Below are positions 1-37,200 of a stretch of 64,000 nucleotides of DNA, one piece after another. Each line of letters opens with the position of its first letter. The stretch's first letter is position 1. The stretch is from Schmidtea nova (lineage: Eukaryota). Under the pieces are notes generated by a model that was not told the origin of the DNA, made no database searches, and was given only the letters and a program-made list of their open reading frames with translations. Made by a program: the position numbers and the translations under genes. The stretch is from positions 251,844,001 to 251,908,000 of the forward strand of contig CM097882.1 in the NCBI GenBank assembly GCA_044892505.1. Direction: 5' to 3'.

Positions 1-1161
1 TATGATTTATTATTATCATGATCATGATCATCATGATCATTGTCACGTCCTGATGTCCAAAACCACACAAGATTTATGGTCGTTCAGACTGAACTATCAA
101 TGACAACTATGTTTCAAAATGTGGTTACAAAAAGTTTGTGAGCATAAGTCTTTATATAAAATACAGAGTTTTACAAAAGAGAAATATTTTCTTATCACAA
201 ACATTTTTACTCCTGTTTTCTTATAAGTGAGAGTTCAATAGGATAGTATGGATAATTTATAACCAAAAACACGTAGAAGGTAACATTTAGAGTCAAATTA
301 ACCAAAAATACTTTGATCTCGACATACAACAAAATCGAGTTGAAGTGAAGAGAATTTGAAAATAGTAAATGTTTAAATAAAAATAAAAATAGATATTGAT
401 GATACGGCTTGCATAATCTAAATATAATTTAAAAACAGAAAAAAATTCAAAGAAAATAAACAAAAGTATAAGAACAGCCGAAACAGGAAACGACTGACTG
501 CAGAATCATAATCATGTTAGATAAAAAAGATCAGTATCGATTAAACAGCAAAAAAGAACAGGATTAAAGACAATAATTGAAATTTATAATTTAATAAAAT
601 TATGTAGTTAAAAATATATAAAATAATCGATTTTAAAAGACTAAATATCAAATGATATATGAATAGAATAGAATATTTGACAATTAAAAACTATTAAAGA
701 CTTTTAACGAATACACAAACTGAAATAAAATTTTTTAAATCTGAAATTTTTGGGAAAAAATAAATAAAGAATAAAAAGAATTAAAAATATAAATAAATAT
801 AAAATAAAATGACTAAAAAACTGAGAAGATATTATTAATCATTAAAATATAATAATGAAATTGAAAATGCACACTTGATAAAGGCTGTGGCGAAATATTG
901 TGTACAAATTTAGATAAATTTTGATCTATAATCTTAACATTATGAGAATTATTGATATTAAAATAAATAATATAATAAATAACATAAAATTAAAAAGAAA
1001 ATCTAAAAGAAATATGCAAAATATTTATAAAAAATATACAAGAAGAAATAAAATCTTATATTGAAAATACAAAAATTATTTTAATTAATACTTTAAATAC
1101 TCAAAATAAAATGAACAAATTCAAAAGAAATTTTAGTAAAATTAAAATAATTTAATTTTAG
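1..1161 (+). other. 3' part of an upstream intron, ending at acceptor ...tttaattttAG(1161)
   Basis: Very AT-rich, A-skewed sequence with stops in all frames. It ends in TTTTAG immediately before A-AAA-GGA-TCC-GTT-GTT-GCA, mirroring the 36592/36593 acceptor. The donor is not confidently located. Confidence 0.65.
6..41. repeat. Degenerate ATT/ATC/ATG trinucleotide microsatellite
   Basis: ttattattatcatgatcatgatcatcatgatcatt read directly. Confidence 0.6.
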
Positions 1162-1247
1162 AAAAGGATCCGTTGTTGCAGACACGTCAGTAGAATTTAT
1201 TTCTACATTTGCTAGTGCGAATATCACTAAGAATTATGATATAATAT
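1162..1247 (+). CDS. Exon encoding the C-terminal half of SEA domain 1 (xKGSVVADTSVEFISTFASANITKNYDII)
   Basis: GSVV motif at 1166-1177, in the same frame as array 1. 19 of the first 21 nt match the exon start at 36593, and both differences are synonymous third positions. Confidence 0.75.
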
Positions 1248-4200
1248 GTAACTTTATGGTTTAATTACAATCAAATTATAATAACTTTTAATAAGTCAAT
1301 ATAACAAACAAGCCAAATGAAGGCTCTACGGGCACATCAATCAAGTCAAGTAGCCAACCAGAATTGTCTTCGAAATCACCAGAGAAAACGAGTGAGAAAT
1401 CATCAAGTCTGAGTAGCGTCGAAAGTTCGTCAACTGTATCGTCAACATCTTCAGCAACATCAACGACTGGAACAAGAAGCAGTGAAAGTTCTACAGTAAA
1501 ACCTATCGAAAGCTCAACAAGCATTTCATCTAGTGAGAAAACAAGTGTGACAAGTTCAGAACAACCGACGACATCAAGCAGACAAACCTCGAGCTCAATA
1601 GGAAGCACTAGTCCTTCAATTGAAACGTCATCAACGCCCGTAACAGTCACATCAATCAAGTCAAGTAGCCAACCAGAATTGTCTTCGAAATCACCAGAGA
1701 AAACGAGTGAGAAATCATCAAGTCTGAGTAGCGTCGAAAGTTCGTCAACTGTATCGTCAACATCTTCAGCAACATCAACGACTGGAACAAGAAGCAGTGA
1801 AAGTTCTACAGTAAAACCTATCGAAAGCTCAACAAGCATTTCATCTAGTGAGAAAACAAGTGTGACAAGTTCAGAACAACCGACGACATCTAGCAGACAA
1901 ACCTCGAGCTCAATACGAAGCACTAGTCCTTCAATTGAAACGTCATCAACGCCCGTAACAGTCACATCAATCAAGTCAAGTAGCCAACCAGAATTGTCTT
2001 CGAAATCACCAGAGAAAACGAGTGAGAAATCATCAAGTCTGAGTAGCGTCGAAAGTTCGTCAACTGTATCGTCAACATCTTCAGCAACATCAACGACTGG
2101 AACAAGAAGCAGTGAAAGTTCTACAGTAAAACCTATCGAAAGCTCAACAAGCATTTCATCTAGTGAGAAAACAAGTGTGACAAGTTCAGAACAACCGACG
2201 ACATCAAGCAGACAAACCTCGAGCTCAATACGAAGCACTAGTCCTTCAATTGAAACGTCATCAACGCCCGTAACAGTCACATCAATCAAGTCAAGTAGCC
2301 AACCAGAATTGTCTTCGAAATCACCAGAGAAAACGAGTGAGAAATCATCAAGTCTGAGTAGCGTCGAAAGTTCGTCAACTGTATCGTCAACATCTTCAGC
2401 AACATCAACGACTGGAACAAGAAGCAGTGAAAGTTCTACAGTAAAACCTATCGAAAGCTCAACAAGCATTTCATCTAGTGAGAAAACAAGTGTGACAAGT
2501 TCAGAACAACCGACGACATCAAGCAGACAAACGTCGAGCTCAATAGGAAGCACTAGTCCTTCAATTGAAACGTCATCAACGCCCGTAACAGTCACATCAA
2601 TCAAGTCAAGTAGCCAACCAGAATTGTCTTCGAAATCACCAGAGAAAACGAGTGAGAAATCATCAAGTCTGAGTAGCGTCGAAAGTTCGTCAACTGTATC
2701 GTCAACATCTTCAGCAACATCAACGACTGGAACAAGAAGCAGTGAAAGTTCTACAGTAAAACCTATCGAAAGCTCAACAAGCATTTCATCTAGTGAGAAA
2801 ACAAGTGTGACAAGTTCAGAACAACCGACGACATCAAGCAGACAAACCTCGAGCTCAATACGAAGCACTAGTCCTTCAATTGAAACGTCATCAACGCCCG
2901 TAACAGTCACATCAATCAAGTCAAGTAGCCAACCAGAATTGTCTTCGAAATCACCAGAGAAAACGAGTGAGAAATCATCAAGTCTGATTAGCGTCGAAAG
3001 TTCGTCAACTGTATCGTCAACATCTTCAGCAACATCAACGACTGGAACAAGAAGCAGTGAAAGTTCTACAGTAAAACCTATCGAAAGCTCAACAAGCATT
3101 TCATCTAGTGAGAAAACAAGTGTGACAAGTTCAGAACAACCGACGACATCAAGCAGACAAACGTCGAGCTCAATAGGAAGCACTAGTCCTTCAATTGAAA
3201 CGTCATCAACGCCCGTAACAGTCACATCAATCAAGTCAAGTAGCCAACCAGAATTGTCTTCGAAATCACCAGAGAAAACGAGTGAGAAATCATCAAGTCT
3301 GAGTAGCGTCGAAAGTTCGTCAACTGTATCGTCAACATCTTCAGCAACATCAACGACTGGAACAAGAAGCAGTGAAAGTTCTACAGTAAAACCTATCGAA
3401 AGCTCAACAAGCATTTCATCTAGTGAGAAAACAAGTGTGACAAGTTCAGAACAACCGACGACATCAAGCAGACAAACCTCGAGCTCAATACGAAGCACTA
3501 GTCCTTCAATTGAAACGTCATCAACGCCCGTAACAGTCACATCAATCAAGTCAAGTAGCCAACCAGAATTGTCTTCGAAATCACCAGAGAAAACGAGTGA
3601 GAAATCATCAAGTCTGAGTAGCGTCGAAAGTTCGTCAACTGTATTGTCAACATCTTCAGCAACATCAACGACTGGAACAAGAAGCAGTGAAAGTTCTACA
3701 GTAAAACCTATCGAAAGCTCAACAAGCATTTCATCTAGTGAGAAAACAAGTGTGACAAGTTCAGAATCACCGACGACATCAAGCAGACAAACGTCGAGCT
3801 CAATAGGAAGCACTAGTCCTTCAATTGAAACGTCATCAACGCCCGTAACAGTCACATCAATCAAGTCAAGTAGCCAACCAGAATTGTCTTCGAAATCACC
3901 AGAGAAAACGAGTGAGAAATCATCAAGTCTGAGTAGCGTCGAAAGTTCGTCAACTGTATCGTCAACATCTTCAGCAACATCAACGACTGGAACAAGAAGC
4001 AGTGAAAGTTCTACAGTAAAACCTATCGAAAGCTCAACAAGCATTTCATCTAGTGAGAAAACAAGTGTGACAAGTTCAGAACAACCGACGACATCAAGCA
4101 GACAAACCTCGAGCTCAATAGGAAGCACTAGTCCTTCAATTGAAACGTCATCAACGCCCGTAACAGTCACATCAATCAAGTCAAGTAGCCAACCAGAATT

Positions 4201-7200
4201 GTCTTCGAAATCACCAGAGAAAACGAGTGAGAAATCATCAAGTCTGAGTAGCGTCGAAAGTTCGTCAACTGTATCGTCAACATCTTCAGCAACATCAACG
4301 ACTGGAACAAGAAGCAGTGAAAGTTCTACAGTAAAACCTATCGAAAGCTCAACAAGCATTTCATCTAGTGAGAAAACAAGTGTGACAAGTTCAGAACAAC
4401 CGACGACATCTAGCAGACAAACCTCGAGCTCAATACGAAGCACTAGTCCTTCAATTGAAACGTCATCAACGCCCGTAACAGTCACATCAATCAAGTCAAG
4501 TAGCCAACCAGAATTGTCTTCGAAATCACCAGAGAAAACGAGTGAGAAATCATCAAGTCTGAGTAGCGTCGAAAGTTCGTCAACTGTATCGTCAACATCT
4601 TCAGCAACATCAACGACTGGAACAAGAAGCAGTGAAAGTTCTACAGTAAAACCTATCGAAAGCTCAACAAGCATTTCATCTAGTGAGAAAACAAGTGTGA
4701 CAAGTTCAGAACAACCGACGACATCAAGCAGACAAACGTCGAGCTCAATAGGAAGCACTAGTCCTTCAATTGAAACGTCATCAACGCCCGTAACAGTCAC
4801 ATCAATCAAGTCAAGTAGCCAACCAGAATTGTCTTCGAAATCACCAGAGAAAACGAGTGAGAAATCATCAAGTCTGAGTAGCGTCGAAAGTTCGTCAACT
4901 GTATCGTCAACATCTTCAGCAACATCAACGACTGGAACAAGAAGCAGTGAAAGTTCTACAGTAAAACCTATCGAAAGCTCAACAAGCATTTCATCTAGTG
5001 AGAAAACAAGTGTGACAAGTTCAGAACAACCGACGACATCAAGCAGACAAACCTCGAGCTCAATACGAAGCACTAGTCCTTCAATTGAAACGTCATCAAC
5101 GCCCGTAACAGTCACATCAATCAAGTCAAGTAGCCAACCAGAATTGTCTTCGAAATCACCAGAGAAAACGAGTGAGAAATCATCAAGTCTGATTAGCGTC
5201 GAAAGTTCGTCAACTGTATCGTCAACATCTTCAGCAACATCAACGACTGGAACAAGAAGCAGTGAAAGTTCTACAGTAAAACCTATCGAAAGCTCAACAA
5301 GCATTTCATCTAGTGAGAAAACAAGTGTGACAAGTTCAGAACAACCGACGACATCAAGCAGACAAACGTCGAGCTCAATAGGAAGCACTAGTCCTTCAAT
5401 TGAAACGTCATCAACGCCCGTAACAGTCACATCAATCAAGTCAAGTAGCCAACCAGAATTGTCTTCGAAATCACCAGAGAAAACGAGTGAGAAATCATCA
5501 AGTCTGAGTAGCGTCGAAAGTTCGTCAACTGTATCGTCAACATCTTCAGCAACATCAACGACTGGAACAAGAAGCAGTGAAAGTTCTACAGTAAAACCTA
5601 TCGAAAGCTCAACAAGCATTTCATCTAGTGAGAAAACAAGTGTGACAAGTTCAGAACAACCGACGACATCAAGCAGACAAACCTCGAGCTCAATACGAAG
5701 CACTAGTCCTTCAATTGAAACGTCATCAACGCCCGTAACAGTCACATCAATCAAGTCAAGTAGCCAACCAGAATTGTCTTCGAAATCACCAGAGAAAACG
5801 AGTGAGAAATCATCAAGTCTGAGTAGCGTCGAAAGTTCGTCAACTGTATTGTCAACATCTTCAGCAACATCAACGACTGGAACAAGAAGCAGTGAAAGTT
5901 CTACAGTAAAACCTATCGAAAGCTCAACAAGCATTTCATCTAGTGAGAAAACAAGTGTGACAAGTTCAGAACAACCGACGACATCAAGCAGACAAACCTC
6001 GAGCTCAATACGAAGCACTAGTCCTTCAATTGAAACGTCATCAACGCCCGTAACAGTCACATCAATCAGGTCAAGTAGCCAACCAGAATTGTCTTCGAAA
6101 TCACCAGAGAAAACGAGTGAGAAATCATCAAGTCTGAGTAGCGTCGAAAGTTCGTCAACTGTATCGTCAACATCTTCAGCAACATCAACGACTGGAACAA
6201 GAAGCAGTGAAAGTTCTACAGTAAAACCTATCGAAAGCTCAACAAGCATTTCATCTAGTGAGAAAACAAGTGTGACAAGTTCAGAACAACCGACGACATC
6301 AAGCAGACAAACCTCGAGCTCAATAGGAAGCACTAGTCCTTCAATTGAAACGTCATCAACGCCCGTAACAGTCACATCAATCAAGTCAAGTAGCCAACCA
6401 GAATTGTCTTCGAAATCACCAGAGAAAACGAGTGAGAAATCATCAAGTCTGAGTAGCGTCGAAAGTTCGTCAACTGTATCGTCAACATCTTCAGCAACAT
6501 CAACGACTGGAACAAGAAGCAGTGAAAGTTCTACAGTAAAACCTATCGAAAGCTCAACAAGCATTTCATCTAGTGAGAAAACAAGTGTGACAAGTTCAGA
6601 ACAACCGACGACATCAAGCAGACAAACCTCGAGCTCAATAGGAAGCACTAGTCCTTCAATTGAAACGTCATCAACGCCCGTAACAGTCACATCAATCAAG
6701 TCAAGTAGCCAACCAGAATTGTCTTCGAAATCACCAGAGAAAACGAGTGAGAAATCATCAAGTCTGAGTAGCGTCGAAAGTTCGTCAACTGTATCGTCAA
6801 CATCTTCAGCAACATCAACGACTGGAACAAGAAGCAGTGAAAGTTCTACAGTAAAACCTATCGAAAGCTCAACAAGCATTTCATCTAGTGAGAAAACAAG
6901 TGTGACAAGTTCAGAACAACCGACGACATCAAGCAGACAAACCTCGAGCTCAATAGGAAGCACTAGTCCTTCAATTGAAACGTCATCAACGCCCGTAACA
7001 GTCACATCAATCAAGTCAAGTAGCCAACCAGAATTGTCTTCGAAATCACCAGAGAAAACGAGTGAGAAATCATCAAGTCTGAGTAGCGTCGAAAGTTCGT
7101 CAACTGTATCGTCAACATCTTCAGCAACATCAACGACTGGAACAAGAAGCAGTGAAAGTTCTACAGTAAAACCTATCGAAAGCTCAACAAGCATTTCATC

Positions 7201-10200
7201 TAGTGAGAAAACAAGTGTGACAAGTTCAGAACAACCGACGACATCAAGCAGACAAACCTCGAGCTCAATAGGAAGCACTAGTCCTTCAATTGAAACGTCA
7301 TCAACGCCCGTAACAGTCACATCAATCAAGTCAAGTAGCCAACCAGAATTGTCTTCGAAATCACCAGAGAAAACGAGTGAGAAATCATCAAGTCTGAGTA
7401 GCGTCGAAAGTTCGTCAACTGTATCGTCAACATCTTCAGCAACATCAACGACTGGAACAAGAAGCAGTGAAAGTTCTACAGTAAAACCTATCGAAAGCTC
7501 AACAAGCATTTCATCTAGTGAGAAAACAAGTGTGACAAGTTCAGAACAACCGACGACATCAGGCAGACAAACGTCGAGCTCAATAGGAAGCACTAGTCCT
7601 TCAATTGAAACGTCATCAACGCCCGTAACAGTCACATCAATCAAGTCAAGTAGCCAACCAGAATTGTCTTCGAAATCACCAGAGAAAACGAGTGAGAAAT
7701 CATCAAGTCTGAGTAGCGTCGAAAGTTCGTCAACTGTATCGTCAACATCTTCAGCAACATCAACGACTGGAACAAGAAGCAGTGAAAGTTCTACAGTAAA
7801 ACCTATCGAAAGCTCAACAAGCATTTCATCTAGTGAGAAAACAAGTGTGACAAGTTCAGAACAACCGACGACATCAAGCAGACAAACGTCGAGCTCAATA
7901 GGAAGCACTAGTCCTTCAATTGAAACGTCATCAACGCCCGTAACAGTCACATCAATCAAGTCAAGTAGCCAACCAGAATTGTCTTCGAAATCACCAGAGA
8001 AAACGAGTGAGAAATCATCAAGTCTGAGTAGCGTCGAAAGTTCGTCAACTGTATCGTCAACATCTTCAGCAACATCAACGACTGGAACAAGAAGCAGTGA
8101 AAGTTCTACAGTAAAACCTATCGAAAGCTCAACAAGCATTTCATCTAGTGAGAAAACAAGTGTGACAAGTTCAGAACAACCGACGACATCAAGCAGACAA
8201 ACGTCGAGCTCAATAGGAAGCACTAGTCCTTCAATTGAAACGTCATCAACGCCCGTAACAGTCACATCAATCAAGTCAAGTAGCCAACCAGAATTGTCTT
8301 CGAAATCACCAGAGAAAACGAGTGAGAAATCATCAAGTCTGAGTAGCGTCGAAAGTTCGTCAACTGTATCGTCAACATCTTCAGCAACATCAACGACTGG
8401 AACAAGAAGCAGTGAAAGTTCTACAGTAAAACCTATCGAAAGCTCAACAAGCATTTCATCTAGTGAGAAAACAAGTGTGACAAGTTCAGAACAACCGACG
8501 ACATCAAGCAGACAAACGTCGAGCTCAATAGGAAGCACTAGTCCTTCAATTGAAACGTCATCAACGCCCGTAACAGTCACATCAATCAAGTCAAGTAGCC
8601 AACCAGAATTGTCTTCGAAATCACCAGAGAAAACGAGTGAGAAATCATCAAGTCTGAGTAGCGTCGAAAGTTCGTCAACTGTATCGTCAACATCTTCAGC
8701 AACATCAACGACTGGAACAAGAAGCAGTGAAAGTTCTACAGTAAAACCTATCGAAAGCTCAACAAGCATTTCATCTAGTGAGAAAACAAGTGTGACAAGT
8801 TCAGAACAACCGACGACATCAAGCAGACAAACCTCGAGCTCAATAGGAAGCACTAGTCCTTCAATTGAAACGTCATCAACGCCCGTAACAGTCACATCAA
8901 TCAAGTCAAGTAGCCAACCAGAATTGTCTTCGAAATCACCAGAGAAAACGAGTGAGAAATCATCAAGTCTGAGTAGCGTCGAAAGTTCGTCAACTGTATT
9001 GTCAACATCTTCAGCAACATCAACGACTGGAACAAGAAGCATTGAAAGTTCTACAGTAAAACCTATCGAAAGCTCAACAAGCATTTCATCTAGTGAGAAA
9101 ACAAGTGTGACAAGTTCAGAATCACCGACGACATCAAGCAGACAAACCTCGAGCTCAATAGGAAGCACTAGTCCTTCAATTGAAACGTCATCAACGCCCG
9201 TAACAGTCACATCAATCAAGTCAAGTAGCCAACCAGAATTGTCTTCGAAATCACCAGGGAAAACGAGTGAGAAATCATCAAGTCTGATTAGCGTCGAAAG
9301 TTCGTCAACTGTATCGTCAACATCTTCAGCAACATCAACGACTGGAACAAGAAGCAGTGAAAGTTCTACAGTAAAACCTATCGAAAGCTCAACAAGCATT
9401 TCATCTAGTGAGAAAACAAGTGTGACAAGTTCAGAATCACCGACGACATCAAGCAGACAAACCTCGAGCTCAATACGAAGCACTAGTCCTTCAATTGAAA
9501 CGTCATCAACGCCCGTAACAGTCACATCAATCAAGTCAAGTAGCCAACCAGAATTGTCTTCGAAATCACCAGAGAAAACGAGTGAGAAATCATCAAGTCT
9601 GAGTAGCGTCGAAAGTTCGTCAACTGTATTGTCAACATCTTCAGCAACATCAACGACTGGAACAAGAAGCATTGAAAGTTCTACAGTAAAACCTATCGAA
9701 AGCTCAACAAGCATTTCATCTAGTGAGAAAACAAGTGTGACAAGTTCAGAATCACCGACGACATCAAGCAGACAAACCTCGAGCTCAATACGAAGCACTA
9801 GTCCTTCAATTGAAACGTCATCAACGCCCGTAACAGTCACATCAATCAAGTCAAGTAGCCAACCAGAATTGTCTTCGAAATCACCAGAGAAAACGAGTGA
9901 GAAATCATCAAGTCTGAGTAGCGTCGAAAGTTCGTCAACTGTATCGTCAACATCTTCAGCAACATCAACGACTGGAACAAGAAGCATTGAAAGTTCTACA
10001 GTAAAACCTATCGAAAGCTCAACAAGCATTTCATCTAGTGAGAAAACAAGTGTGACAAGTTCAGAATCACCGACGACATCAAGCAGACAAACGTCGAGCT
10101 CAATAGGAAGCACTAGTCCTTCAATTGAAACGTCATCAACGCCCGTAACAGTCACATCAATCAAGTCAAGTAGCCAACCAGAATTGTCTTCGAAATCACC

Positions 10201-25200: not shown

Positions 25201-28200
25201 AAGCAGACAAACCTCGAGCTCAATACGAAGCACTAGTCCTTCAATTGAAACGTCATCAACGCCCGTAACAGTCACATCAATCAAGTCAAGTAGCCAACCA
25301 GAATTGTCTTCGAAATCACCAGAGAAAACGAGTGAGAAATCATCAAGTCTGAGTAGCGTCGAAAGTTCGTCAACTGTATCGTCAACATCTTCAGCAACAT
25401 CAACGACTGGAACAAGAAGCAGTGAAAGTTCTACAGTAAAACCTATCGAAAGCTCAACAAGCATTTCATCTAGTGAGAAAACAAGTGTGACAAGTTCAGA
25501 ACAACCGACGACATCAAGCAGACAAACGTCGAGCTCAATAGGAAGCACTAGTCCTTCAATTGAAACGTCATCAACGCCCGTAACAGTCACATCAATCAAG
25601 TCAAGTAGCCAACCAGAATTGTCTTCGAAATCACCAGAGAAAACGAGTGAGAAATCATCAAGTCTGAGTAGCGTCGAAAGTTCGTCAACTGTATTGTCAA
25701 CATCTTCAGCAACATCAACGACTGGAACAAGAAGCATTGAAAGTTCTACAGTAAAACCTATCGAAAGCTCAACAAGCATTTCATCTAGTGAGAAAACAAG
25801 TGTGACAAGTTCAGAATCACCGACGACATCAAGCAGACAAACGTCGAGCTCAATAGGAAGCACTAGTCCTTCAATTGAAACGTCATCAACGCCCGTAACA
25901 GTCACATCAATCAAGTCAAGTAGCCAACCAGAATTGTCTTCGAAATCACCAGAGAAAACGAGTGAGAAATCATCAAGTCTGAGTAGCGTCGAAAGTTCGT
26001 CAACTGTATCGTCAACATCTTCAGCAACATCAACGACTGGAACAAGAAGCATTGAAAGTTCTACAGTAAAACCTATCGAAAGCTCAACAAGCATTTCATC
26101 TAGTGAGAAAACAAGTGTGACAAGTTCAGAATCACCGACGACATCAAGCAGACAAACGTCGAGCTCAATAGGAAGCACTAGTCCTTCAATTGAAACGTCA
26201 TCAACGCCCGTAACAGTCACATCAATCAAGTCAAGTAGCCAACCAGAATTGTCTTCGAAATCACCAGAGAAAACGAGTGAGAAATCATCAAGTCTGATTA
26301 GCGTCGAAAGTTCGTCAACTGTATCGTCAACATCTTCAGCAACATCAACGACTGGAACAAGAAGCAGTGAAAGTTCTACAGTAAAACCTATCGAAAGCTC
26401 AACAAGCATTTCATCTAGTGAGAAAACAAGTGTGACAAGTTCAGAATCACCGACGACATCAAGCAGACAAACCTCGAGCTCAATACGAAGCACTAGTCCT
26501 TCAATTGAAACGTCATCAACGCCCGTAACAGTCACATCAATCAAGTCAAGTAGCCAACCAGAATTGTCTTCGAAATCACCAGAGAAAACGAGTGAGAAAT
26601 CATCAAGTCTGAGTAGCGTCGAAAGTTCGTCAAGTGTATTGTCAACATCTTCAGCAACATCAACGACTGGAACAAGAAGCATTGAAAGTTCTACAGTAAA
26701 ACCTATCGAAAGCTCAACAAGCATTTCATCTAGTGAGAAAACAAGTGTGACAAGTTCAGAACAACCGACGACATCAAGCAGACAAACCTCGAGCTCAATA
26801 CGAAGCACTAGTCCTTCAATTGAAACGTCATCAACGCCCGTAACAGTCACATCAATCAAGTCAAGTAGCCAACCAGAATTGTCTTCGAAATCACCAGAGA
26901 AAACGAGTGAGAAATCATCAAGTCTGAGTAGCGTCGAAAGTTCGTCAACTGTATCGTCAACATCTTCAGCAACATCAACGACTGGAACAAGAAGCAGTGA
27001 AAGTTCTACAGTAAAACCTATCGAAAGCTCAACAAGCATTTCATCTAGTGAGAAAACAAGTGTGACAAGTTCAGAATCACCGACGACATCAAGCAGACAA
27101 ACGTCGAGCTCAATAGGAAGCACTAGTCCTTCAATTGAAACGTCATCAACGCCCGTAACAGTCACATCAATCAAGTCAAGTAGCCAACCAGAATTGTCTT
27201 CGAAATCACCAGAGAAAACGAGTGAGAAATCATCAAGTCTGAGTAGCGTCGAAAGTTCGTCAACTGTATCGTCAACATCTTCAGCAACATCAACGACTGG
27301 AACAAGAAGCAGTGAAAGTTCTACAGTAAAACCTATCGAAAGCTCAACAAGCATTTCATCTAGTGAGAAAACAAGTGTGACAAGTTCAGAACAACCGACG
27401 ACATCAAGCAGACAAACGTCGAGCTCAATACGAAGCACTAGTCCTTCAATTGAAACGTCATCAACGCCCGTAACAGTCACATCAATCAAGTCAAGTAGCC
27501 AACCAGAATTGTCTTCGAAATCACCAGAGAAAATGAGTGAGAAATCATCAAGTCTAAGTAGCGTCGAAAGTTCGTCATCTGTATCGTCAACATCTTCAGC
27601 AACATCAACGACTGGAACAAGAAGCAGTGAAAGTTCTACAGTAAAACCTATTGAAAGCTCAACAAGCATTTCATCTAGTGAGAAAACAAGTGTGACAAGT
27701 TCAGAACAACCGACGACATCAAGCAGACAAACCTCGAGCTCAATACGAAGCACTAGTCCTTCAATTGAAACGTCATCAACGCCCGTAACAGTCACATCAA
27801 TCAAGTCAAGTAGCCAACCAGAATTGTCTTCGAAATCACCAGAGAAAACGAGTGAGAAATCATCAAGTCTGAGTAGCGTCGAAAGTTCGTCAACTGTATT
27901 GTCAACATCTTCAGCAACATCAACGACTGGAACAAGAAGCATTGAAAGTTCTACAGTAAAACCTATCGAAAGCTCAACAAGCATTTCATCTAGTGAGAAA
28001 ACAAGTGTGACAAGTTCAGAACAACCGACGACATCAAGCAGACAAACGTCGAGCTCAATAGGAAGCACTAGTCCTTCAATTGAAACGTCATCAACGCCCG
28101 TAACAGTCACATCAATCAAGTCAAGTAGCCAACCAGAATTGTCTTCGAAATCACCAGAGAAAACGAGTGAGAAATCATCAAGTCTAAGTAGCGTCGAAAG

Positions 28201-31200
28201 TTCGTCAACTGTATTGTCAACATCTTCAGCAACATCAACGACTGGAACAAGAAGCAGTGAAAGTTCTACAGTAAAACCTATCGAAAGCTCAACAAGCATT
28301 TCATCTAGTGAAAAAACAAGTGTGACAAGTTCAGAATCACCGACGACATCAAGCAGACAAACCTCGAGCTCAATAGGAAGCACTAGTCCTTCAATTGAAA
28401 CGTCATCAACGCCCGTAACAGTCACATCAATCAAGTCAAGTAGCCAACCAGAATTGTCTTCGAAATCACCAGAGAAAACGAGTGAGAAATCATCAAGTCT
28501 GAGTAGCGTCGAAAGTTCGTCAACTGTATCGTCAACATCTTCAGCAACATCAACGACTGGAACAAGAAGCAGTGAAAGTTCTACAGTAAAACCTATCGAA
28601 AGCTCAACAAGCATTTCATCTAGTGAGAAAACAAGTGTGACAAGTTCAGAACAACCGACGACATCAAGCAGACAAACGTCGAGCTCAATAGGAAGCACTA
28701 GTCCTTCAATTGAAACGTCATCAACGCCCGTAACAGTCACATCAATCAAGTCAAGTAGCCAACCAGAATTGTCTTCGAAATCACCAGAGAAAAGGAGTGA
28801 GAAATCATCAAGTCTGAGTAGTGTCGAAAGTTCGTCAACTGTATCGTCAACATCTTCAGCAACATCAACGACTGGAACAAGAAGCAATGAAAGTTCTACA
28901 GTAAAACCTATCGAAAGCTCAACAAGCATTTCATCTAGTGAGAAAACAAGTGTGACAAGTTCAGAACAACCGACGACATCAAGCAGACAAACGTCGAGCT
29001 CAATAGGAAGCACTAGTCCTTCAATTGAAACGTCATCAACGCCCGTAACAGTCACATCAATCAAGTCAAGTAGCCAACCAGAATTGTCTTCGAAATCACC
29101 AGAGAAAACGAGTGAGAAATCATCAAGTCTGAGTAGCGTCGAAAGTTCGTCAACTGTATCGTCAACATCTTCAGCAACATCAACGACTGGAACAAGAAGC
29201 AGTGAAAGTTCTACAGTAAAACCTATCGAAAGCTCAACAAGCATTTCATCTAGTGAGAAAACAAGTGTGACAAGTTCAGAACAACCGACGACATCAAGCA
29301 GACAAACGTCGAGCTCAATAGGAAGCACTAGTCCTTCAATTGAAACGTCATCAACGCCCGTAACAGTCACATCAATCAAGTCAAGTAGCCAACCAGAATT
29401 GTCTTCGAAATCACCAGAGAAAACGAGTGAGAAATCATCAAGTCTGAGTAGCGTCGAAAGTTCGTCAACTGTATCGTCAACATCTTCAGCAACATCAACG
29501 ACTGGAACAAGAAGCAGTGAAAGTTCTACAGTAAAACCTATCGAAAGCTCAACAAGCATTTCATCTAGTGAGAAAACAAGTGTGACAAGTTCAGAATCAC
29601 CGACGACATCAAGCAGACAAACGTCGAGCTCAATAGGAAGCACTAGTCCTTCAATTGAAACGTCATCAACGCCCGTAACAGTCACATCAATCAAGTCAAG
29701 TAGCCAACCAGAATTGTCTTCGAAATCACCAGAGAAAACGAGTGAGAAATCATCAAGTCTGAGTAGCGTCGAAAGTTCGTCATCTGTATCGTCAACATCT
29801 TCAGCAACATCAACGACTGGAACAAGAAGCAGTGAAAGTTCTACAGTAAAACCTATTGAAAGCTCAACAAGCATTTCATCTAGTGAGAAAACAAGTGTGA
29901 CAAGTTCAGAACAACCGACGACATCAAGCAGACAAACCTCGAGCTCAATACGAAGCACTAGTCCTTCAATTGAAACGTCATCAACGCCCGTAACAGTCAC
30001 ATCAATCAAGTCAAGTAGCCAACCAGAATTGTCTTCGAAATCACCAGAGAAAACGAGTGAGAAATCATCAAGTCTGAGTAGCGTCGAAAGTTCGTCAACT
30101 GTATTGTCAACATCTTCAGCAACATCAACGACTGGAACAAGAAGCATTGAAAGTTCTACAGTAAAACCTATCGAAAGCTCAACAAGCATTTCATCTAGTG
30201 AGAAAACAAGTGTGACAAGTTCAGAACAACCGACGACATCAAGCAGACAAACGTCGAGCTCAATAGGAAGCACTAGTCCTTCAATTGAAACGTCATCAAC
30301 GCCCGTAACAGTCACATCAATCAAGTCAAGTAGCCAACCAGAATTGTCTTCGAAATCACCAGAGAAAACGAGTGAGAAATCATCAAGTCTAAGTAGCGTC
30401 GAAAGTTCGTCAACTGTATTGTCAACATCTTCAGCAACATCAACGACTGGAACAAGAAGCAGTGAAAGTTCTACAGTAAAACCTATCGAAAGCTCAACAA
30501 GCATTTCATCTAGTGAAAAAACAAGTGTGACAAGTTCAGAATCACCGACGACATCAAGCAGACAAACCTCGAGCTCAATAGGAAGCACTAGTCCTTCAAT
30601 TGAAACGTCATCAACGCCCGTAACAGTCACATCAATCAAGTCAAGTAGCCAACCAGAATTGTCTTCGAAATCACCAGAGAAAACGAGTGAGAAATCATCA
30701 AGTCTGAGTAGCGTCGAAAGTTCGTCAACTGTATCGTCAACATCTTCAGCAACATCAACGACTGGAACAAGAAGCAGTGAAAGTTCTACAGTAAAACCTA
30801 TCGAAAGCTCAACAAGCATTTCATCTAGTGAGAAAACAAGTGTGACAAGTTCAGAACAACCGACGACATCAAGCAGACAAACGTCGAGCTCAATAGGAAG
30901 CACTAGTCCTTCAATTGAAACGTCATCAACGCCCGTAACAGTCACATCAATCAAGTCAAGTAGCCAACCAGAATTGTCTTCGAAATCACCAGAGAAAAGG
31001 AGTGAGAAATCATCAAGTCTGAGTAGTGTCGAAAGTTCGTCAACTGTATCGTCAACATCTTCAGCAACATCAACGACTGGAACAAGAAGCAATGAAAGTT
31101 CTACAGTAAAACCTATCGAAAGCTCAACAAGCATTTCATCTAGTGAGAAAACAAGTGTGACAAGTTCAGAACAACCGACGACATCAAGCAGACAAACGTC

Positions 31201-34200
31201 GAGCTCAATAGGAAGCACTAGTCCTTCAATTGAAACGTCATCAACGCCCGTAACAGTCACATCAATCAAGTCAAGTAGCCAACCAGAATTGTCTTCGAAA
31301 TCACCAGAGAAAACGAGTGAGAAATCATCAAGTCTGAGTAGCGTCGAAAGTTCGTCAACTGTATCGTCAACATCTTCAGCAACATCAACGACTGGAACAA
31401 GAAGCAGTGAAAGTTCTACAGTAAAACCTATCGAAAGCTCAACAAGCATTTCATCTAGTGAGAAAACAAGTGTGACAAGTTCAGAACAACCGACGACATC
31501 AAGCAGACAAACGTCGAGCTCAATAGGAAGCACTAGTCCTTCAATTGAAACGTCATCAACGCCCGTAACAGTCACATCAATCAAGTCAAGTAGCCAACCA
31601 GAATTGTCTTCGAAATCACCAGAGAAAACGAGTGAGAAATCATCAAGTCTGAGTAGCGTCGAAAGTTCGTCAACTGTATCGTCAACATCTTCAGCAACAT
31701 CAACGACTGGAACAAGAAGCAGTGAAAGTTCTACAGTAAAACCTATCGAAAGCTCAACAAGCATTTCATCTAGTGAGAAAACAAGTGTGACAAGTTCAGA
31801 ATCACCGACGACATCAAGCAGACAAACGTCGAGCTCAATAGGAAGCACTAGTCCTTCAATTGAAACGTCATCAACGCCCGTAACAGTCACATCAATCAAG
31901 TCAAGTAGCCAACCAGAATTGTCTTCGAAATCACCAGAGAAAACGAGTGAGAAATCATCAAGTCTGAGTAGCGTCGAAAGTTCGTCAACTGTATCGTCAA
32001 CATCTTCAGCAACATCAACGACTGGAACAAGAAGCAGTGAAAGTTCTACAGTAAAACCTATCGAAAGCTCAACAAGCATTTCATCTAGTGAGAAAACAAG
32101 TGTGACAAGTTCAGAACAACCGACGACATCAAGCAGACAAACGTCGAGCTCAATAGGAAGCACTAGTCCTTCAATTGAAACGTCATCAACGCCCGTAACA
32201 GTCACATCAATCAAGTCAAGTAGCCAACCAGAATTGTCTTCGAAATCACCAGAGAAAACGAGTGAGAAATCATCAAGTCTGAGTAGCGTCGAAAGTTCGT
32301 CAACTGTATCGTCAACATCTTCAGCAACATCAACGACTGGAACAAGAAGCAGTGAAAGTTCTACAGTAAAACCTATCGAAAGCTCAACAAGCATTTCATC
32401 TAGTGAGAAAACAAGTGTGACAAGTTCAGAACAACCGACGACATCAAGCAGACAAACCTCGAGCTCAATACGAAGCACTAGTCCTTCAATTGAAACGTCA
32501 TCAACGCCCGTAACAGTCACATCAATCAAGTCAAGTAGCCAACCAGAATTGTCTTCGAAATCACCAGAGAAAACGAGTGAGAAATCATCAAGTCTGAGTA
32601 GCGTCGAAAGTTCGTCAACTGTATCGTCAACATCTTCAGCAACATCAACGACTGGAACAAGAAGCAGTGAAAGTTCTACAGTAAAACCTATCGAAAGCTC
32701 AACAAGCATTTCATCTAGTGAGAAAACAAGTGTGACAAGTTCAGAACAACCGACGACATCAAGCAGACAAACCTCGAGCTCAATACGAAGCACTAGTCCT
32801 TCAATTGAAACGTCATCAACGCCCGTAACAGTCACATCAATCAAGTCAAGTAGCCAACCAGAATTGTCTTCGAAATCACCAGAGAAAACGAGTGAGAAAT
32901 CATCAAGTCTGAGTAGCGTCGAAAGTTCGTCAACTGTATTGTCAACATCTTCAGCAACATCAACGACTGGAACAAGAAGCATTGAAAGTTCTACAGTAAA
33001 ACCTATCGAAAGCTCAACAAGCATTTCATCTAGTGAGAAAACAAGTGTGACAAGTTCAGAACAACCGACGACATCAAGCAGACAAACGTCGAGCTCAATA
33101 GGAAGCACTAGTCCTTCAATTGAAACGTCATCAACGCCCGTAACAGTCACATCAATCAAGTCAAGTAGCCAACCAGAATTGTCTTCGAAATCACCAGAGA
33201 AAACGAGTGAGAAATCATCAAGTCTGAGTAGCGTCGAAAGTTCGTCAACTGTATCGTCAACATCTTCAGCAACATCAACGACTGGAACAAGAAGCAGTGA
33301 AAGTTCTACAGCAAAACCTATCGAAAGCTCAACAAGCATTTCATCTAGTGAGAAAACAAGTGTGACAAGTTCAGAATCACCGACGACATCAAGCAGACAA
33401 ACCTCGAGCTCAATAGGAAGCACTAGTCCTTCAATTGAAACGTCATCAACGCCTGTAACAGTCACATCAATCAAGTCAAGTAGCCAACCAGAATTGTCTT
33501 CGAAATCACCAGAGAAAACGAGTGAGAAATCATCAAGTCTGAGTAGCGTCGAAAGTTCGTCAACTGTATCGTCAACATCTTCAGCAACATCAACGACTGG
33601 AACAAGAAGCAGTGAAAGTTCTACAGTAAAACCTATCGAAAGCTCAACAAGCATTTCATCTAGTGAGAAAACAAGTGTGACAAGTTCAGAACAACCGACG
33701 ACATCAAGCAGACAAACGTCGAGCTCAATAGGAAGCACTAGTCCTTCAATTGAAACGTCATCAACGCCCGTAACAGTCACATCAATCAAGTCAAGTAGCC
33801 AACCAGAATTGTCTTCGAAATCACCAGAGAAAACGAGTGAGAAATCATCAAGTCTGAGTAGCGTCGAAAGTTCGTCAACTGTATCGTCAACATCTTCAGC
33901 AACATCAACGACTGGAACAAGAAGCAGTGAAAGTTCTACAGTAAAACCTATCGAAAGCTCAACAAGCATTTCATCTAGTGAGAAAACAAGTGTGACAAGT
34001 TCAGAACAACCGACGACATCAAGCAGACAAACCTCGAGCTCAATAGGAAGCACTAGTCCTTCAATTGAAACGTCATCAACGCCCGTAACAGTCACATCAA
34101 TCAAGTCAAGTAGCCAACCAGAATTGTCTTCGAAATCACCAGAGAAAACGAGTGAGAAATCATCAAGTCTGAGTAGCGTCGAAAGTTCGTCAACTGTATC

Positions 34201-37200
34201 GTCAACATCTTCAGCAACATCAACGACTGGAACAAGAAGCAGTGAAAGTTCTACAGTAAAACCTATCGAAAGCTCAACAAGCATTTCATCTAGTGAGAAA
34301 ACAAGTGTGACAAGTTCAGAACAACCGACGACATCAAGCAGACAAACCTCGAGCTCAATAGGAAGCACTAGTCCTTCAATTGAAACGTCATCAACGCCCG
34401 TAACAGTCACATCAATCAAGTCAAGTAGCCAACCAGAATTGTCTTCGAAATCACCAGAGAAAACGAGTGAGAAATCATCAAGTCTGAGTAGCGTCGAAAG
34501 TTCGTCAACTGTATCGTCAACATCTTCAGCAACATCAACGACTGGAACAAGAAGCAGTGAAAGTTCTACAGTAAAACCTATCGAAAGCTCAACAAGCATT
34601 TCATCTAGTGAGAAAACAAGTGTGACAAGTTCAGAATCACCGACGACATCAAGCAGACAAACCTCGAGCTCAATAGGAAGCACTAGTCCTTCAATTGAAA
34701 CGTCATCAACGCCCGTAACAGTCACATCAATCAAGTCAAGTAGCCAACCAGAATTGTCTTCGAAATCACCAGAGAAAACGAGTGAGAAATCATCAAGTCT
34801 GAGTAGCGTCGAAAGTTCGTCAACTGTATCGTCAACATCTTCAGCAACATCAACGACTGGAACAAGAAGCAGTGAAAGTTCTACAGTAAAACCTATCGAA
34901 AGCTCAACAAGCATTTCATCTAGTGAGAAAACAAGTGTGACAAGTTCAGAACAACCGACGACATCAAGCAGACAAACGTCGAGCTCAATAGGAAGCACTA
35001 GTCCTTCAATTGAAACGTCATCAACGCCCGTAACAGTCACATCAATCAAGTCAAGTAGCCAACCAGAATTGTCTTCGAAATCACCAGAGAAAACGAGTGA
35101 GAAATCATCAAGTCTGAGTAGCGTCGAAAGTTCGTCAACTGTATCGTCAACATCTTCAGCAACATCAACGACTGGAACAAGAAGCAGTGAAAGTTCTACA
35201 GTAAAACCTATCGAAAGCTCAACAAGCATTTCATCTAGTGAGAAAACAAGTGTGACAAGTTCAGAATCACCGACGACATCAAGCAGACAAACCTCGAGCT
35301 CAATACGAAGCACTAGTCCTTCAATTGAAACGTCATCAACGCCCGTAACAGTCACATCAATCAAGTCAAGTAGCCAACCAGAATTGTCTTCGAAATCACC
35401 AGAGAAAACGAGTGAGAAATCATCAAGTCTGAGTAGCGTCGAAAGTTCGTCAACTGTATCGTCAACATCTTCAGCAACATCAACGACTGGAACAAGAAGC
35501 AGTGAAAGTTCTACAGTAAAACCTATCGAAAGCTCAACAAGCATTTCATCTAGTGAGAAAACAAGTGTGACAAGTTCAGAATCACCGACGACATCAAGCA
35601 GACAAACCTCGAGCTCAATAGGAAGCACTAGTCCTTCAATTGAAACGTCATCAACGCCCGTAACAGTCACATCAATCAAGTCAAGTAGCCAACCAGAATT
35701 GTCTTCGAAATCACCAGAGAAAACGAGTGAGAAATCATCAAGTCTGAGTAGCGTCGAAAGTTCGTCAACTTTTTCTCCTTCAAGAACCTTTGCATCGACT
35801 GGAATATATTTCATTATTGATTTTTCACAAACTTTTTCTTATACTTTATTTAATATCAGCTCTCCAGAATACAAATCTTTATCTAGTTATTTTACAAATT
35901 TCATCAAGGAAAGTCTCAATCATTTTGACTACCTCTCTGTTTTCACTTTTATTCTTTCTTTTCGGTAAGTTATTTTAATATTCTTCAAATATTTTTCAAA
36001 ATTATATGTTTTTATAAAAAACATTTATCTAAATTTTGCATCTTATATTTAACGATATTAGTTATTTTATATTGCTTGTACCCTAAAAACGTTATATACC
36101 CTCCACCTCGAAATTAAAATAGAAATAGATTGCATTATTAATTATTGTCATTTAATTTTTATCGCAGAACTAGAAATATCAAAGCTAATAAGCTACACAC
36201 ACTGACAGCGCTTGCACTTGCACTGCGATTATTTGATGAATCCATAAATTTTATAAAAATATATCTAAAATATATCTAAAATATATCTAAAATATAGGTA
36301 AAATAGGTAAAATATATCTAAGAGAAATCTTTAAAACTATTCTTTTTCAAATTTTTAGAATAGCTCTTGTTCCAGAATTCTAATTTTAAAAATAAATAAC
36401 TTCTATATTTATCCTAACTTCATAAATCTTTCAATATATTAAAGCGGTTTCTTTTCTTTTGTACCTGACTTTCTATTCGCACTGTACCATCGATGCATTA
36501 AACATTTTATATATACGTATCGATGCATTATTATTATCACAACCAATATCTAAATTACTTTAAAAATAAGAATATAAAATCATCTTATTTAGAAAAGGAT
36601 CGGTCGTTGCAGAATCCAATATAACGGTTTTATCGAGAAATTTCACACTTGTACAAGGGGAAACAATCAGAGAAATATTAAAAAGTAACAATTCAAACAT
36701 AGAGGTGTATCCAGCAACAGTAACCTATCCAACAAATTCAATAACCGTTGAAATAAAGATAACAACTGAAAATGAAAATAAAGAAACTAATAGTGCAACG
36801 AAACAAATAAGCTCAGAAATCAGAAGTACAGCTAGCACAGGAAAATCATCGGAAGTAACTTCGACCTTATCTCCATCAGGCAGATCAATTTCACAAACAT
36901 CTCCTACAATTGCCTCAGAAACCAAATCCTCTACTGGTTCAGTTCCGACTTCAAGTACTTCAGGAACGATTGAAACAAGTTCAAGTATGTCATCCACACC
37001 ATTGTCTACTGGCACGTCAGAAAGAAGCTCGACTATCAAATCATCAAGTGTATCAGAAATCAGTAGTACAGCTAGCACAGGAAAATCATCGGAAGTAACT
37101 TCGACCTTATCTCCATCAGGCACATCAATTTCACAAACATCTCCTACAATTGCCTCAGAAACCAAATCCTCTACTGGTTCAGTACCGACTTCAAGTACTT

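What the first reader, a model, noticed from the sequence alone, without database searches (positions are those of the whole stretch)
1162..36613. Symmetric split-SEA cassette: a phase-2/phase-2 module that can be duplicated or skipped while rebuilding a complete SEA
Seen: both modules start at the same point in the SEA fold (AG|A-AAA-GGA-TCN-GTN-GTT-GCA-GA, 19/21 nt identical, only synonymous differences). The first module ends in a phase-2 donor after ILSF-CG. The module is therefore [SEA C-half + PTS array + SEA N-half]. Inference: the gene grew by duplicating this cassette, and each copy then amplified its own repeat. Skipping 1162-35964 would remove about 11,600 aa in frame and produce a chimeric but complete SEA, giving a splice-controlled length switch.
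Basis: partly seen in the sequence, partly recalled or inferred. Interest (0 to 1): 0.75.

Follow-up and report, generated by a model that had tools for sequence, protein, structure and literature searches.

The report
Giant mucin gene with intron-split SEA domains
The window holds the core of a predicted membrane-anchored mucin of about 26,000 residues whose three small SEA domains are each cut by the same inherited intron, so the giant sugar-bearing exons can be duplicated in frame, but nothing yet shows they are skipped.

Summary
Both modules start AG|A AAA GGA TCN GTN GTT GCA GA (19/21 nt) at 1162 and 36593. Module 1 ends ...ILSF-CG|GTAAGT at 35964.

- The upstream exon, 8.3 kb before 1162, follows a signal-peptide exon, is a SEA N-half and ends CG|GTGAGT in phase 2.
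- Array 2 runs to window-equivalent 79,300 and ends in a third N-half, TC|GTAAGT in phase 2. A 42-nt intron, (S)SGSIKV, a transmembrane helix and a tail follow.

The predicted protein is signal peptide-SEA1-PTS1-SEA2-PTS2-SEA3-TM, about 26,083 codons.

The phase symmetry is not special to this gene. Nine other SEA domains of the same genome carry the same phase-2 intron in the codon two residues before G|S. The cassette is therefore a by-product of an inherited intra-domain intron.

Cassette-register duplication is compatible with the data but unproven. The N-halves are at most 26% identical, and the two repeat units are unrelated.

The splice switch has no evidence.

The scan noted a similar giant SEA/PTS mucin 175.6 Mb downstream in this genome (s1-385605).

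Verdict: a new, extreme member of the SEA-type transmembrane mucins. Interest is modest.

The parts
1..1161 (+). Last 1,161 nt of an intron of about 8.3 kb. Its donor (CG|GTGAGT, phase 2) lies 7,146 nt upstream of the window, at the end of the SEA1 N-half exon. Positions 33-272 are an interspersed repeat.
   Evidence: AT-rich (29% GC), stops in all frames, acceptor ttttag at 1156-1161.
1162..1247 (+). Exon with the SEA1 C-half start: the split codon CG|A, then KGSVVADTSVEFISTFASANITKNYDII. Phase-2 acceptor.
   Evidence: The end at 1247 assumes the 48-nt mini-intron; it would be 1258 under the 54-nt model.
1248..1295 (+). Inferred mini-intron (GTAACT...AATAAG, 48 nt) that removes three in-frame TAA codons. 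The alternative is 1259-1312 (54 nt). Removing 1248-1312 (65 nt) would break the frame.
   Evidence: Intron sizes of 42-52 nt are typical of this gene family. No RNA confirmation.
1296..35770 (+). Short linker plus PTS array 1: 109 units of 315 nt (105 aa; 42% Ser, 18% Thr), 44 distinct unit sequences, with local higher-order duplications.
35771..35964 (+). SEA2 N-half (FSPSRTF...LFNISSPEYKSL...FTFILSF plus CG of the split Arg codon), in the same exon as array 1. A phase-2 donor GTAAGT follows.
   Evidence: Best library hits are N-halves of Pfam-verified SEA domains, in register with NF-R-N-GSVIV. Language-model features are nearest SEA clusters.
35965..36592 (+). 628-nt phase-2 intron inside SEA2.
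36593..36812 (+). SEA2 C-half: A of the split Arg codon, then KGSVVAESNITVLSRNFTLVQGETIREIL...EVYPATVTY and a short linker.
   Evidence: Identified by the G|S motif, the intron position and context. No significant sequence match of its own.
36813..64000 (+). PTS array 2, 240-nt units (80 aa). It continues beyond the window to 176 units. The exon ends at window-equivalent 79,300 in the SEA3 N-half with a phase-2 donor TC|GTAAGT.

Best explanation
The window is the middle of one very large gene for a type-I membrane-tethered, SEA-type mucin.

Predicted layout: signal peptide - SEA1 - PTS rod 1 (about 11,500 aa) - SEA2 - PTS rod 2 (about 14,100 aa) - SEA3 - transmembrane helix - cytoplasmic tail of about 66 aa. 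The total is about 26,083 codons.

Each SEA domain is interrupted by the same phase-2 intron. It lies in the codon two residues before the Gly-Ser self-cleavage site. This genome's SEA domains share that position generally, so it was inherited and not built for this gene.

Because the intron sits inside the domain, every exon block between two SEA introns is 'C-half + PTS + N-half' and is 2-2 symmetric. Tandem duplication of SEA plus PTS units therefore stays in frame, whatever the breakpoints within the introns. Afterwards each PTS array expanded and homogenised on its own by unequal exchange; the two unit sequences are unrelated.

Inferred from established SEA biology: each SEA cleaves itself at G|S and stays non-covalently associated. 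The mature protein would then be a chain of four polypeptides whose ends lie two residues from the exon-block borders, and the SEA joints would act as force-sensitive break points.

Shown: the sequence, the phases, the motifs, and the family-wide intron.
Inferred: expression, the mini-intron, cleavage, and constitutive inclusion of both giant exons.
For: Gene model
- Exon 1 reads MIRRNLILVLFLLVFEG. Exon 2 ends ...IRISIDNI-CG|GTGAGT.
- Acceptors at 1162 and 36593 and the donor at 35964.
- Array 2 ends ...ILQF-TC|GTAAGT. A 42-nt intron follows, then A TCT GGT TCG ATT AAA GTA, a TM segment WAYYVIGVCVFIVLVALVVMFCQ, a tail and a stop.

SEA identity
- N0 is similar to paralog N-halves, z 5-10.5.
- N-half profiles put solved SEA domains at the top of the PDB. 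A1 gives ADGRF1 SEA N-fragment 8hc0_B at E 0.0064 and MUC1 6bsb_A at E 1.2. A3 gives 8hc0_B at E 0.026 and 1ivz_A at E 0.13. From my own knowledge, 1ivz is the mouse MUC16 SEA domain.
- Language-model neighbours of N0 and N1 are SEA clusters, scores 0.90 and 0.88.
- N1's two best hits among 1.84 billion proteins are multi-SEA proteins with Pfam SEA at 380.7 and 120 bits. N1 aligns to the N-half, and ...NF-R-N-GSVIV follows in register with ILSF-R|K-GSVVA.

Family-wide intron
- L036, L038 and L042-L048 all have a phase-2 donor, an intron of about 50 nt, and then x-G-S-[VI].
- L025 and L030 show the donor only.

Independent arrays
- The two repeat units are unrelated, z 0.7.
Against:
- The runs that hold the stretch are of unknown type. 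Their 75-88% word share could come from array words alone, since 73% of the query was array.
- Pfam SEA does not reach threshold on any single half.
- N2, C1, C2 and C3 have no significant similarity of their own beyond the G-S motif.
- N1's library E-values (3.8e-11, 2.9e-7) are inflated by summing near-identical repeats. Single domains score only 8-16 bits, and three bacterial repeat proteins also scored.
- An open frame across near-identical repeats is weak evidence of selection. Variant sites are 11 synonymous to 25 non-synonymous, close to the random expectation.
- Array 2 has about 125 consecutive identical units, so its assembled length is uncertain.
Confidence: 0.75

Rival explanations
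1. Cassette-register duplication. A single exon block [C-half + PTS + N-half] was duplicated with breakpoints in the two intra-SEA introns, giving modules 1 and 2. Each copy then amplified its own repeat.
For: This register predicts C1 like C2 and N1 like N2, with N0 and C3 as outsiders. C1 and C2 share KGSVVA[D/E] (19/21 nt), while C3 reads SGSIKV. N1 and N2 pair in the tree at 78/94 support and 26% identity, whereas N0 groups with paralogs elsewhere. Nearly identical (87-98%) SEA N-halves with near-identical introns in the 427-Mb cluster show that such units do duplicate in this genome.
Against: N1 versus N2 is not significant pairwise (z 0.8). C1 versus C2 is not significant once the motif is removed (z -0.2). 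The repeat units are unrelated. Intron flanks show no similarity. Long-branch attraction of the two most divergent N-halves could explain the pairing (branch lengths 5.25 and 0.87). The register of an old tandem duplication cannot be recovered from these data.
Confidence: 0.3
2. Splice-controlled length switch. Regulated skipping of module 1, of module 2, or of both yields shorter isoforms with a chimeric SEA, down to a signal peptide-SEA-TM protein.
For: All three donors are phase 2 and all three acceptors start with the third codon base A, so every combination is in frame. A review reports that MUC1 has many isoforms through exon skipping and intron retention (PMC8328826).
Against: No junction evidence. 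Skipping module 1 needs two exons skipped together, because exon 1162-1247 alone is 86 nt and not symmetric. The upstream donor would have to bypass an acceptor 8.3 kb away for one 44 kb away. The chimeric halves are no more than 15-26% identical to the native partners. There is no unusual intron-to-intron complementarity that could loop the cassette out: runs of 14 and 16 nt against shuffle maxima of 16 and 19. The symmetry is explained by the inherited intron without any switch.
Confidence: 0.07
3. The internal 'SEA2' and 'SEA3' are not SEA folds. They would be short non-repetitive linkers that happen to carry G-S-V/I after an intron.
For: Pfam and PDB find nothing with single halves. N2 and C1-C3 are not significant against paralog profiles.
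Against: The intron falls in exactly the family-typical codon and phase in all three. N1 aligns in register to Pfam-verified SEA N-halves, including a block LFNxSSPEY[KR]SL that is identical at 10 of 11 positions. Language-model neighbours are SEA clusters. SEA3 sits next to the TM helix, as in known SEA mucins.
Confidence: 0.08
4. Assembly artefact. The array lengths, or even the two-module contiguity, result from mis-assembly of near-perfect repeats.
For: 143 of 176 units of array 2 are identical, about 125 of them in a row. That is roughly 30 kb of perfect repeat.
Against: Array 1 has 44 unit types with an ordered local structure typical of real arrays. Both arrays keep exact period and frame. 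The unique junctions (N1, the intron, C2) are ordinary single-copy sequence. The cassette borders do not depend on copy number.
Confidence: 0.1

Closest known systems
MUC16 (CA125), vertebrate multi-SEA transmembrane mucin
   Same: A giant membrane-tethered mucin with several SEA domains alternating with Ser/Thr-rich stretches. The repeat unit is spread over several exons: each 156-aa repeat is encoded by five exons (PMC3431878). The SEA domains are therefore split by introns and the units were duplicated in tandem.
   Different: Here there are only three SEA domains but two enormous single-exon PTS rods (34.7 and 42.7 kb), against about 60 short SEA repeats. All three SEAs here keep G-S, whereas that review says a cleavage-type motif has been confirmed in only one MUC16 SEA. 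No sequence orthology was detected.
MUC1
   Same: Signal peptide, tandem-repeat PTS array, SEA with a G|SVVV-type site next to the TM helix, and a short tail. Many isoforms are reported through exon skipping and intron retention (PMC8328826). That is the precedent for a length switch.
   Different: MUC1 has one SEA and one array. According to that review the cleavage site lies within exon 4 rather than two residues after an exon junction. No isoform evidence exists here.
Paralogous giant SEA/PTS mucin cluster of the same genome (C1: 426.4-428.0 Mb; earlier finding s1-385605)
   Same: The same phase-2 intron in the codon two residues before G|S, the same x-G-S-V-[IQ]-[AV] start of the next exon, and introns of about 50 nt.
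   Different: There the N-half sits in a short exon of its own (open frames of 85-94 aa) and the copies are 87-98% identical, so the duplications are recent. Here the N-halves are fused to the PTS exons and are highly diverged.
SEA domain of adhesion GPCR ADGRF1 (PDB 8hc0) and a sturgeon-assembly SEA-EGF protein (P0002)
   Same: The best solved-structure match of the N-half profile. P0002 is the best in-register natural sequence for N1 followed by the G|S motif.
   Different: P0002's gene has no intron at this position. One exon reads LLPYLQ...NFRNGSVIVN, and its intron lies earlier, after ...ENTF. The intron position is therefore not universal to SEA domains.
Symmetric-phase exon modules of exon shuffling (classically 1-1 modules; my own knowledge)
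   Same: A block with equal phases at both borders can be duplicated, inserted or skipped in frame.
   Different: The classic modules are whole domains bounded by phase-1 introns. Here the borders lie inside a domain and are phase 2, so the block carries two half-domains.

Membership tests
SEA domain (Pfam PF01390) | Match to the family profile above the curated cut-off (26.4 bits) | tested here: inconclusive
   Only single exon halves could be scanned, and none matched at E up to 10. Paralog N-half exons reach 17.9-19.8 bits in the genome scan. N1's two best library relatives carry PF01390 at 380.7 and 120 bits.
SEA domain (Pfam PF01390) | G|S-[VI]-[VI]-type self-cleavage motif after the second strand | tested here: met
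   The three domains read R-K-G-S-V-V-A, R-K-G-S-V-V-A and S-S-G-S-I-K-V. Cleavage itself was not tested.
SEA domain (Pfam PF01390) | N-terminal half homologous to known SEA N-halves | tested here: met
   Met for N0 and N1. N0: z 5-10.5 to paralogs, whose profile puts 8hc0_B and 1ivz_A on top. N1: in-register alignment to P0002's Pfam SEA. Not met for N2 on its own: profile score 2.1 bits, reached or exceeded by 171 of 2000 shuffles.
SEA domain (Pfam PF01390) | Alpha/beta sandwich fold of about 100-120 residues | not testable with these tools
   It needs the spliced sequence. The joined step was left out.
SEA-type transmembrane mucin | Signal peptide, large Ser/Thr/Pro-rich tandem-repeat domain, SEA next to a single TM helix, cytoplasmic tail | tested here: met
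   Signal-like exon MIRRNLILVLFLLVFEG. Arrays with about 60% Ser+Thr. SEA3 C-half, then a 23-residue hydrophobic segment, then a basic stop-transfer LRRYNARNRQ and a stop. All are read from sequence. No signal-peptide or TM predictor was available.
MUC16 orthologue | Detectable sequence orthology or a shared repeat unit | tested here: not met
   Only a marginal profile hit to the 1ivz SEA (E 0.13). No significant library hits other than two remote multi-SEA proteins.
Alternatively spliced symmetric cassette | Equal intron phase on both sides | tested here: met
   Phase 2 at 1162, 35964, 36593 and 79300.
Alternatively spliced symmetric cassette | Observed transcripts with and without the cassette | not testable with these tools

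The most novel reading that the evidence does not exclude
The intra-SEA phase-2 intron is used as a universal joint. By pairing any SEA N-half donor with any downstream C-half acceptor, the animal would make mucin isoforms from about 0.3 kb to 78 kb of coding sequence from one gene. That would be a glycocalyx-height switch with chimeric but functional SEA domains, and the same mechanism would operate across the whole SEA-mucin family of this genome.
Probability: 0.06. Interest if true: 0.7.

Novelty: new member of a known kind. Interest (0 to 1): 0.35.

Why it matters
If the model is right, this is one of the largest predicted animal proteins (about 26,000 residues). Its exons of 34.7 and 42.7 kb would be among the longest coding exons described.

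The exon blocks coincide, to within two residues, with the polypeptide chains that SEA self-cleavage would release. This gives a simple picture of how SEA mucins grow: an inherited intra-domain intron keeps any SEA+PTS duplication in frame.

It also gives a clean, cheap test for isoform switching, because only skipped transcripts give short RT-PCR products. Without RNA data the switch remains a paper possibility, and the symmetry itself is an expected consequence of a conserved intron.

Tried and rejected
- Pfam on single halves: nothing.
- phmmer of N1 and N2 against the PDB, and the C-half profile A2 against the PDB: nothing meaningful.
- Genome-wide Pfam SEA scan: mostly retrotransposon false positives. 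Only L025 and L030 were useful.
- Word search with the SEA2 C-half: no hit.
- A possible decayed N-half exon 320-430 nt upstream of the window (tblastn E 1.3): rejected. Its nucleotide score of 27 is no better than other windows of the intron, which average 21.4 and reach 26.
- Relatedness of the two repeat units: none, z 0.7.
- Selection signal in array variants: none. There are 11 synonymous and 25 non-synonymous sites against 0.25 and 0.69 expected.
- Intron-to-intron complementarity that could loop out module 1: not above shuffles.
A second call beside them was stopped by the cap.
- Literature: no paper in the held library links the SEA domain with intron phase or position, or with planarian mucins.
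- Left out by instruction: joining N-half and C-half exons into a spliced protein for Pfam, structure prediction or trees. All searches were done exon by exon, by reference.

Full report
**Where the window lies**

The window is G000:C1:251844001-251908000 (+) of a 1.25-Gb, AT-rich assembly dominated by three very large contigs. I fetched 60 kb upstream and 80 kb downstream. Below, coordinates outside 1-64000 are 'window-equivalent'.

**Observation**

- At 1162 and at 36593 an exon starts after an AG with A AAA GGA TCN GTN GTT GCA GA. That is 19/21 nt, with two synonymous differences. Both read (R)KGSVVA[D/E].
- The first module ends ...FTFILSF-CG|GTAAGT at 35964, a phase-2 donor.
- Between these borders lie a 315-nt x 109 array (1333-35770) and the start of a 240-nt array (36813 onwards).
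- Module 1 is in fact two exons. Three in-frame TAA codons need a mini-intron, either 1248-1295 (48 nt) or 1259-1312 (54 nt). Removing 1248-1312 would break the frame.
- With the 48-nt model, module 1 is 11,585 codons and module 2 is 14,236 codons (arithmetic).

Downstream.
- The frame opened at 36594 runs 14,236 codons to 79300.
- It ends in a non-repetitive stretch ...FFVSFVIISNNFSPDYLDLKSE...YNILQF, followed by TC|GTAAGT in phase 2.
- After a 42-nt intron the next exon starts A TCT GGT TCG ATT AAA GTA, which reads (S)SGSIKV.
- Then come a 23-residue hydrophobic segment, a basic stop-transfer sequence, a tail and a stop at about 79932.

Upstream.
- I scanned all GT donors for phase-2 open frames of at least 45 codons. 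This found one exon ending ...NLKIIRISIDNI-CG|GTGAGT, 7,146 nt before the window.
- It is preceded by a 78-nt intron and by an exon reading MIRRNLILVLFLLVFEG, which looks like a signal peptide.

Both predictions therefore held. The gene reads signal peptide-SEA1-PTS1-SEA2-PTS2-SEA3-TM-tail, about 26,083 codons over 87.5 kb.

**Are these SEA halves?**

Single halves give nothing in Pfam or in plain PDB searches. The evidence is indirect but it converges.

1. The exon-2 N-half (N0) is clearly related to N-half exons elsewhere in the genome, with z 5-10.5 against shuffles.
2. Profiles of these N-halves put solved SEA domains on top of 177,635 PDB sequences.
   - A1: the ADGRF1 SEA N-fragment 8hc0_B at E 0.0064, and MUC1 6bsb_A at E 1.2.
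   - A3, built without N1 and N2: 8hc0_B at E 0.026 and 1ivz_A at E 0.13. From my own knowledge, 1ivz_A is the mouse MUC16 SEA.
3. Language-model neighbours of N0 and N1 are SEA clusters, scores 0.90 and 0.88, the latter with 172 shared features.
4. An exhaustive search with N1 found five proteins at E up to 0.001.
   - The best two are multi-SEA proteins: P0001 with ten Pfam SEA domains, and P0002 with four.
   - In P0002 the alignment runs ...LFNKSSPEYRSL...LEILNF-R-N-GSVIV against ...LFNISSPEYKSL...FTFILSF-R|K-GSVVA. The part of the motif encoded after the intron, which was not in the query, therefore follows in register.

Caveats.
- The library E-values (3.8e-11 and 2.9e-7) sum near-identical repeats. 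Single domains score 8-16 bits, and three bacterial repeat proteins also scored.
- N2 and all three C-halves have no significant similarity of their own beyond G-S. They are assigned by motif, intron position and context.

**The key reinterpretation**

A profile of N-halves found further N-half exons in the genome, clustered at C1:426.4-428.0 Mb and 197 Mb.
- In all nine paralogous domains where I could read both sides (L036, L038, L042-L048), the N-half ends with two extra bases before GT (GA, AC, CG or TC). An intron of about 50 nt follows, and the next exon starts N NNN GGN AGY/TCN GTN, that is x-G-S-[VI].
- Two more domains (L025, L030) show the same kind of donor.
- So the phase-2 intron in the codon two residues before G|S is a family trait of this genome's SEA domains.
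- It is not universal. The gene of P0002 reads through this point in one exon and has its intron earlier.

Given such an intron, any gene with successive SEA domains automatically has 2-2 symmetric 'C-half + linker + N-half' exon blocks. Any tandem duplication of SEA plus PTS is in frame.

My reads of its SEA exons agree. They also show recent unit duplication there: N-halves are 87-98% identical and their introns are nearly identical.

**Duplication register**

The cassette model predicts C1 like C2 and N1 like N2. Both trends are present but weak.
- C1 versus C2 is significant only through the 7-residue motif: z 4.7 with it and -0.2 without.
- N1 and N2 pair at 78/94 support on long branches, and their pairwise z is 0.8.
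- The two repeat units are unrelated, z 0.7. That fits independent amplification but says nothing about a common origin.

I rate the specific register at about 0.3.

**The arrays**

- Array 1 has 44 unit types with local higher-order copies, as real arrays do.
- Array 2 has 143 identical units out of 176, about 125 of them consecutive. Its assembled length should be treated with caution.
- Variant sites show no clear purifying selection.
- An open frame across near-identical copies is weak evidence of constraint. The better evidence for a live gene is the intact unique parts with consensus splice sites.

**The splice switch**

On paper every donor-acceptor combination is in frame. I could not test it.
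Nothing was laid, and the cap stopped a second call beside them.
- The runs that hold the stretch (X19-X22) are of unknown type. Their 75-88% word share can be explained by array words alone.

Arguments against a switch, all inferential:
- The symmetry needs no such explanation.
- Module 1 would require two exons to be skipped together.
- The upstream donor would have to bypass an acceptor 8.3 kb away in favour of one 44 kb away.
- Chimeric SEA halves are no more than 15-26% identical to the native partners.
- There is no unusual complementarity between the flanking introns.

Precedent exists in MUC1, for which a review reports many isoforms through exon skipping and intron retention (PMC8328826).

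**How it probably works**

This part is inferred from known SEA biology. Each SEA cleaves at G|S during folding and stays associated. The mature molecule would then be four chains: N0; C1-PTS1-N1; C2-PTS2-N2; and C3-TM-tail. Their ends lie two residues from the exon-block borders, and the three SEA joints would serve as force-sensitive release points of a very tall glycocalyx element.

**Comparison and verdict**

The closest known layout is MUC16, which has several SEA domains and repeat units of five exons each (PMC3431878). MUC1 is the next closest. I found no paper in the held library on SEA intron positions.

This is a new and extreme member of the SEA-type transmembrane mucins. The 'cassette' is best seen as a by-product of an inherited intron, and the length switch is unsupported.

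Noticed in passing
window 36593-64000 and on to window-equivalent 79300: If it is one exon as the open frame suggests, it is 42,708 nt (14,236 codons). The preceding exon is 34,669 nt. Both would be among the longest coding exons known, and the predicted protein has about 26,083 residues.
   Followed up: partly
window about 48000-64000, continuing to about 78500: About 125 consecutive, perfectly identical 240-nt units (143 of 176 identical overall). This is either a very recent expansion or an assembler's estimate of copy number.
   Followed up: partly
window 33-272: Interspersed repeat of about 240 nt inside the 8.3-kb intron. The first look gave 2,180 candidates in the genome, and 39 other copies were scored at 74-78% identity on all three large contigs.
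   Followed up: no
window 1288-35814 (-) and 36725-63958 (-): The reverse strand of both arrays is also open (11,508 and 9,077 codons). This is most likely a by-product of repeating a unit that lacks reverse-frame stops, not a second gene.
   Followed up: no
about 53.5-54.1 kb upstream of the window (L013/L014): A 207-codon open frame with a WD-repeat-like sequence (...SLRFSPDGKMLLLSG...RLYVWRV...). It is presumably an exon of the neighbouring gene on the same strand.
   Followed up: no
G000:C1:426.45-427.96 Mb and 197.39 Mb (L036, L038, L042-L048): A cluster of SEA N-half exons on both strands, some 87-98% identical and with near-identical introns of about 50 nt. This shows recent unit duplication in one or more other giant mucin genes.
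   Followed up: partly
L049 (gene of P0002, sturgeon assembly record flagged UNVERIFIED_CONTAM): The locus is 33% GC. The exon encoding the SEA N-part occurs three times at 99% identity (29865, 38617, 48410), about 9-10 kb apart. This is another SEA-containing gene with repeated multi-kb units.
   Followed up: no
about 44.4-44.6 kb upstream of the window: Three open frames spaced 128 nt apart share the same text (QNLSNRTF.SRTSFVMVFTCKRF...). This is a short tandem repeat of about 128 nt in intergenic DNA.
   Followed up: no
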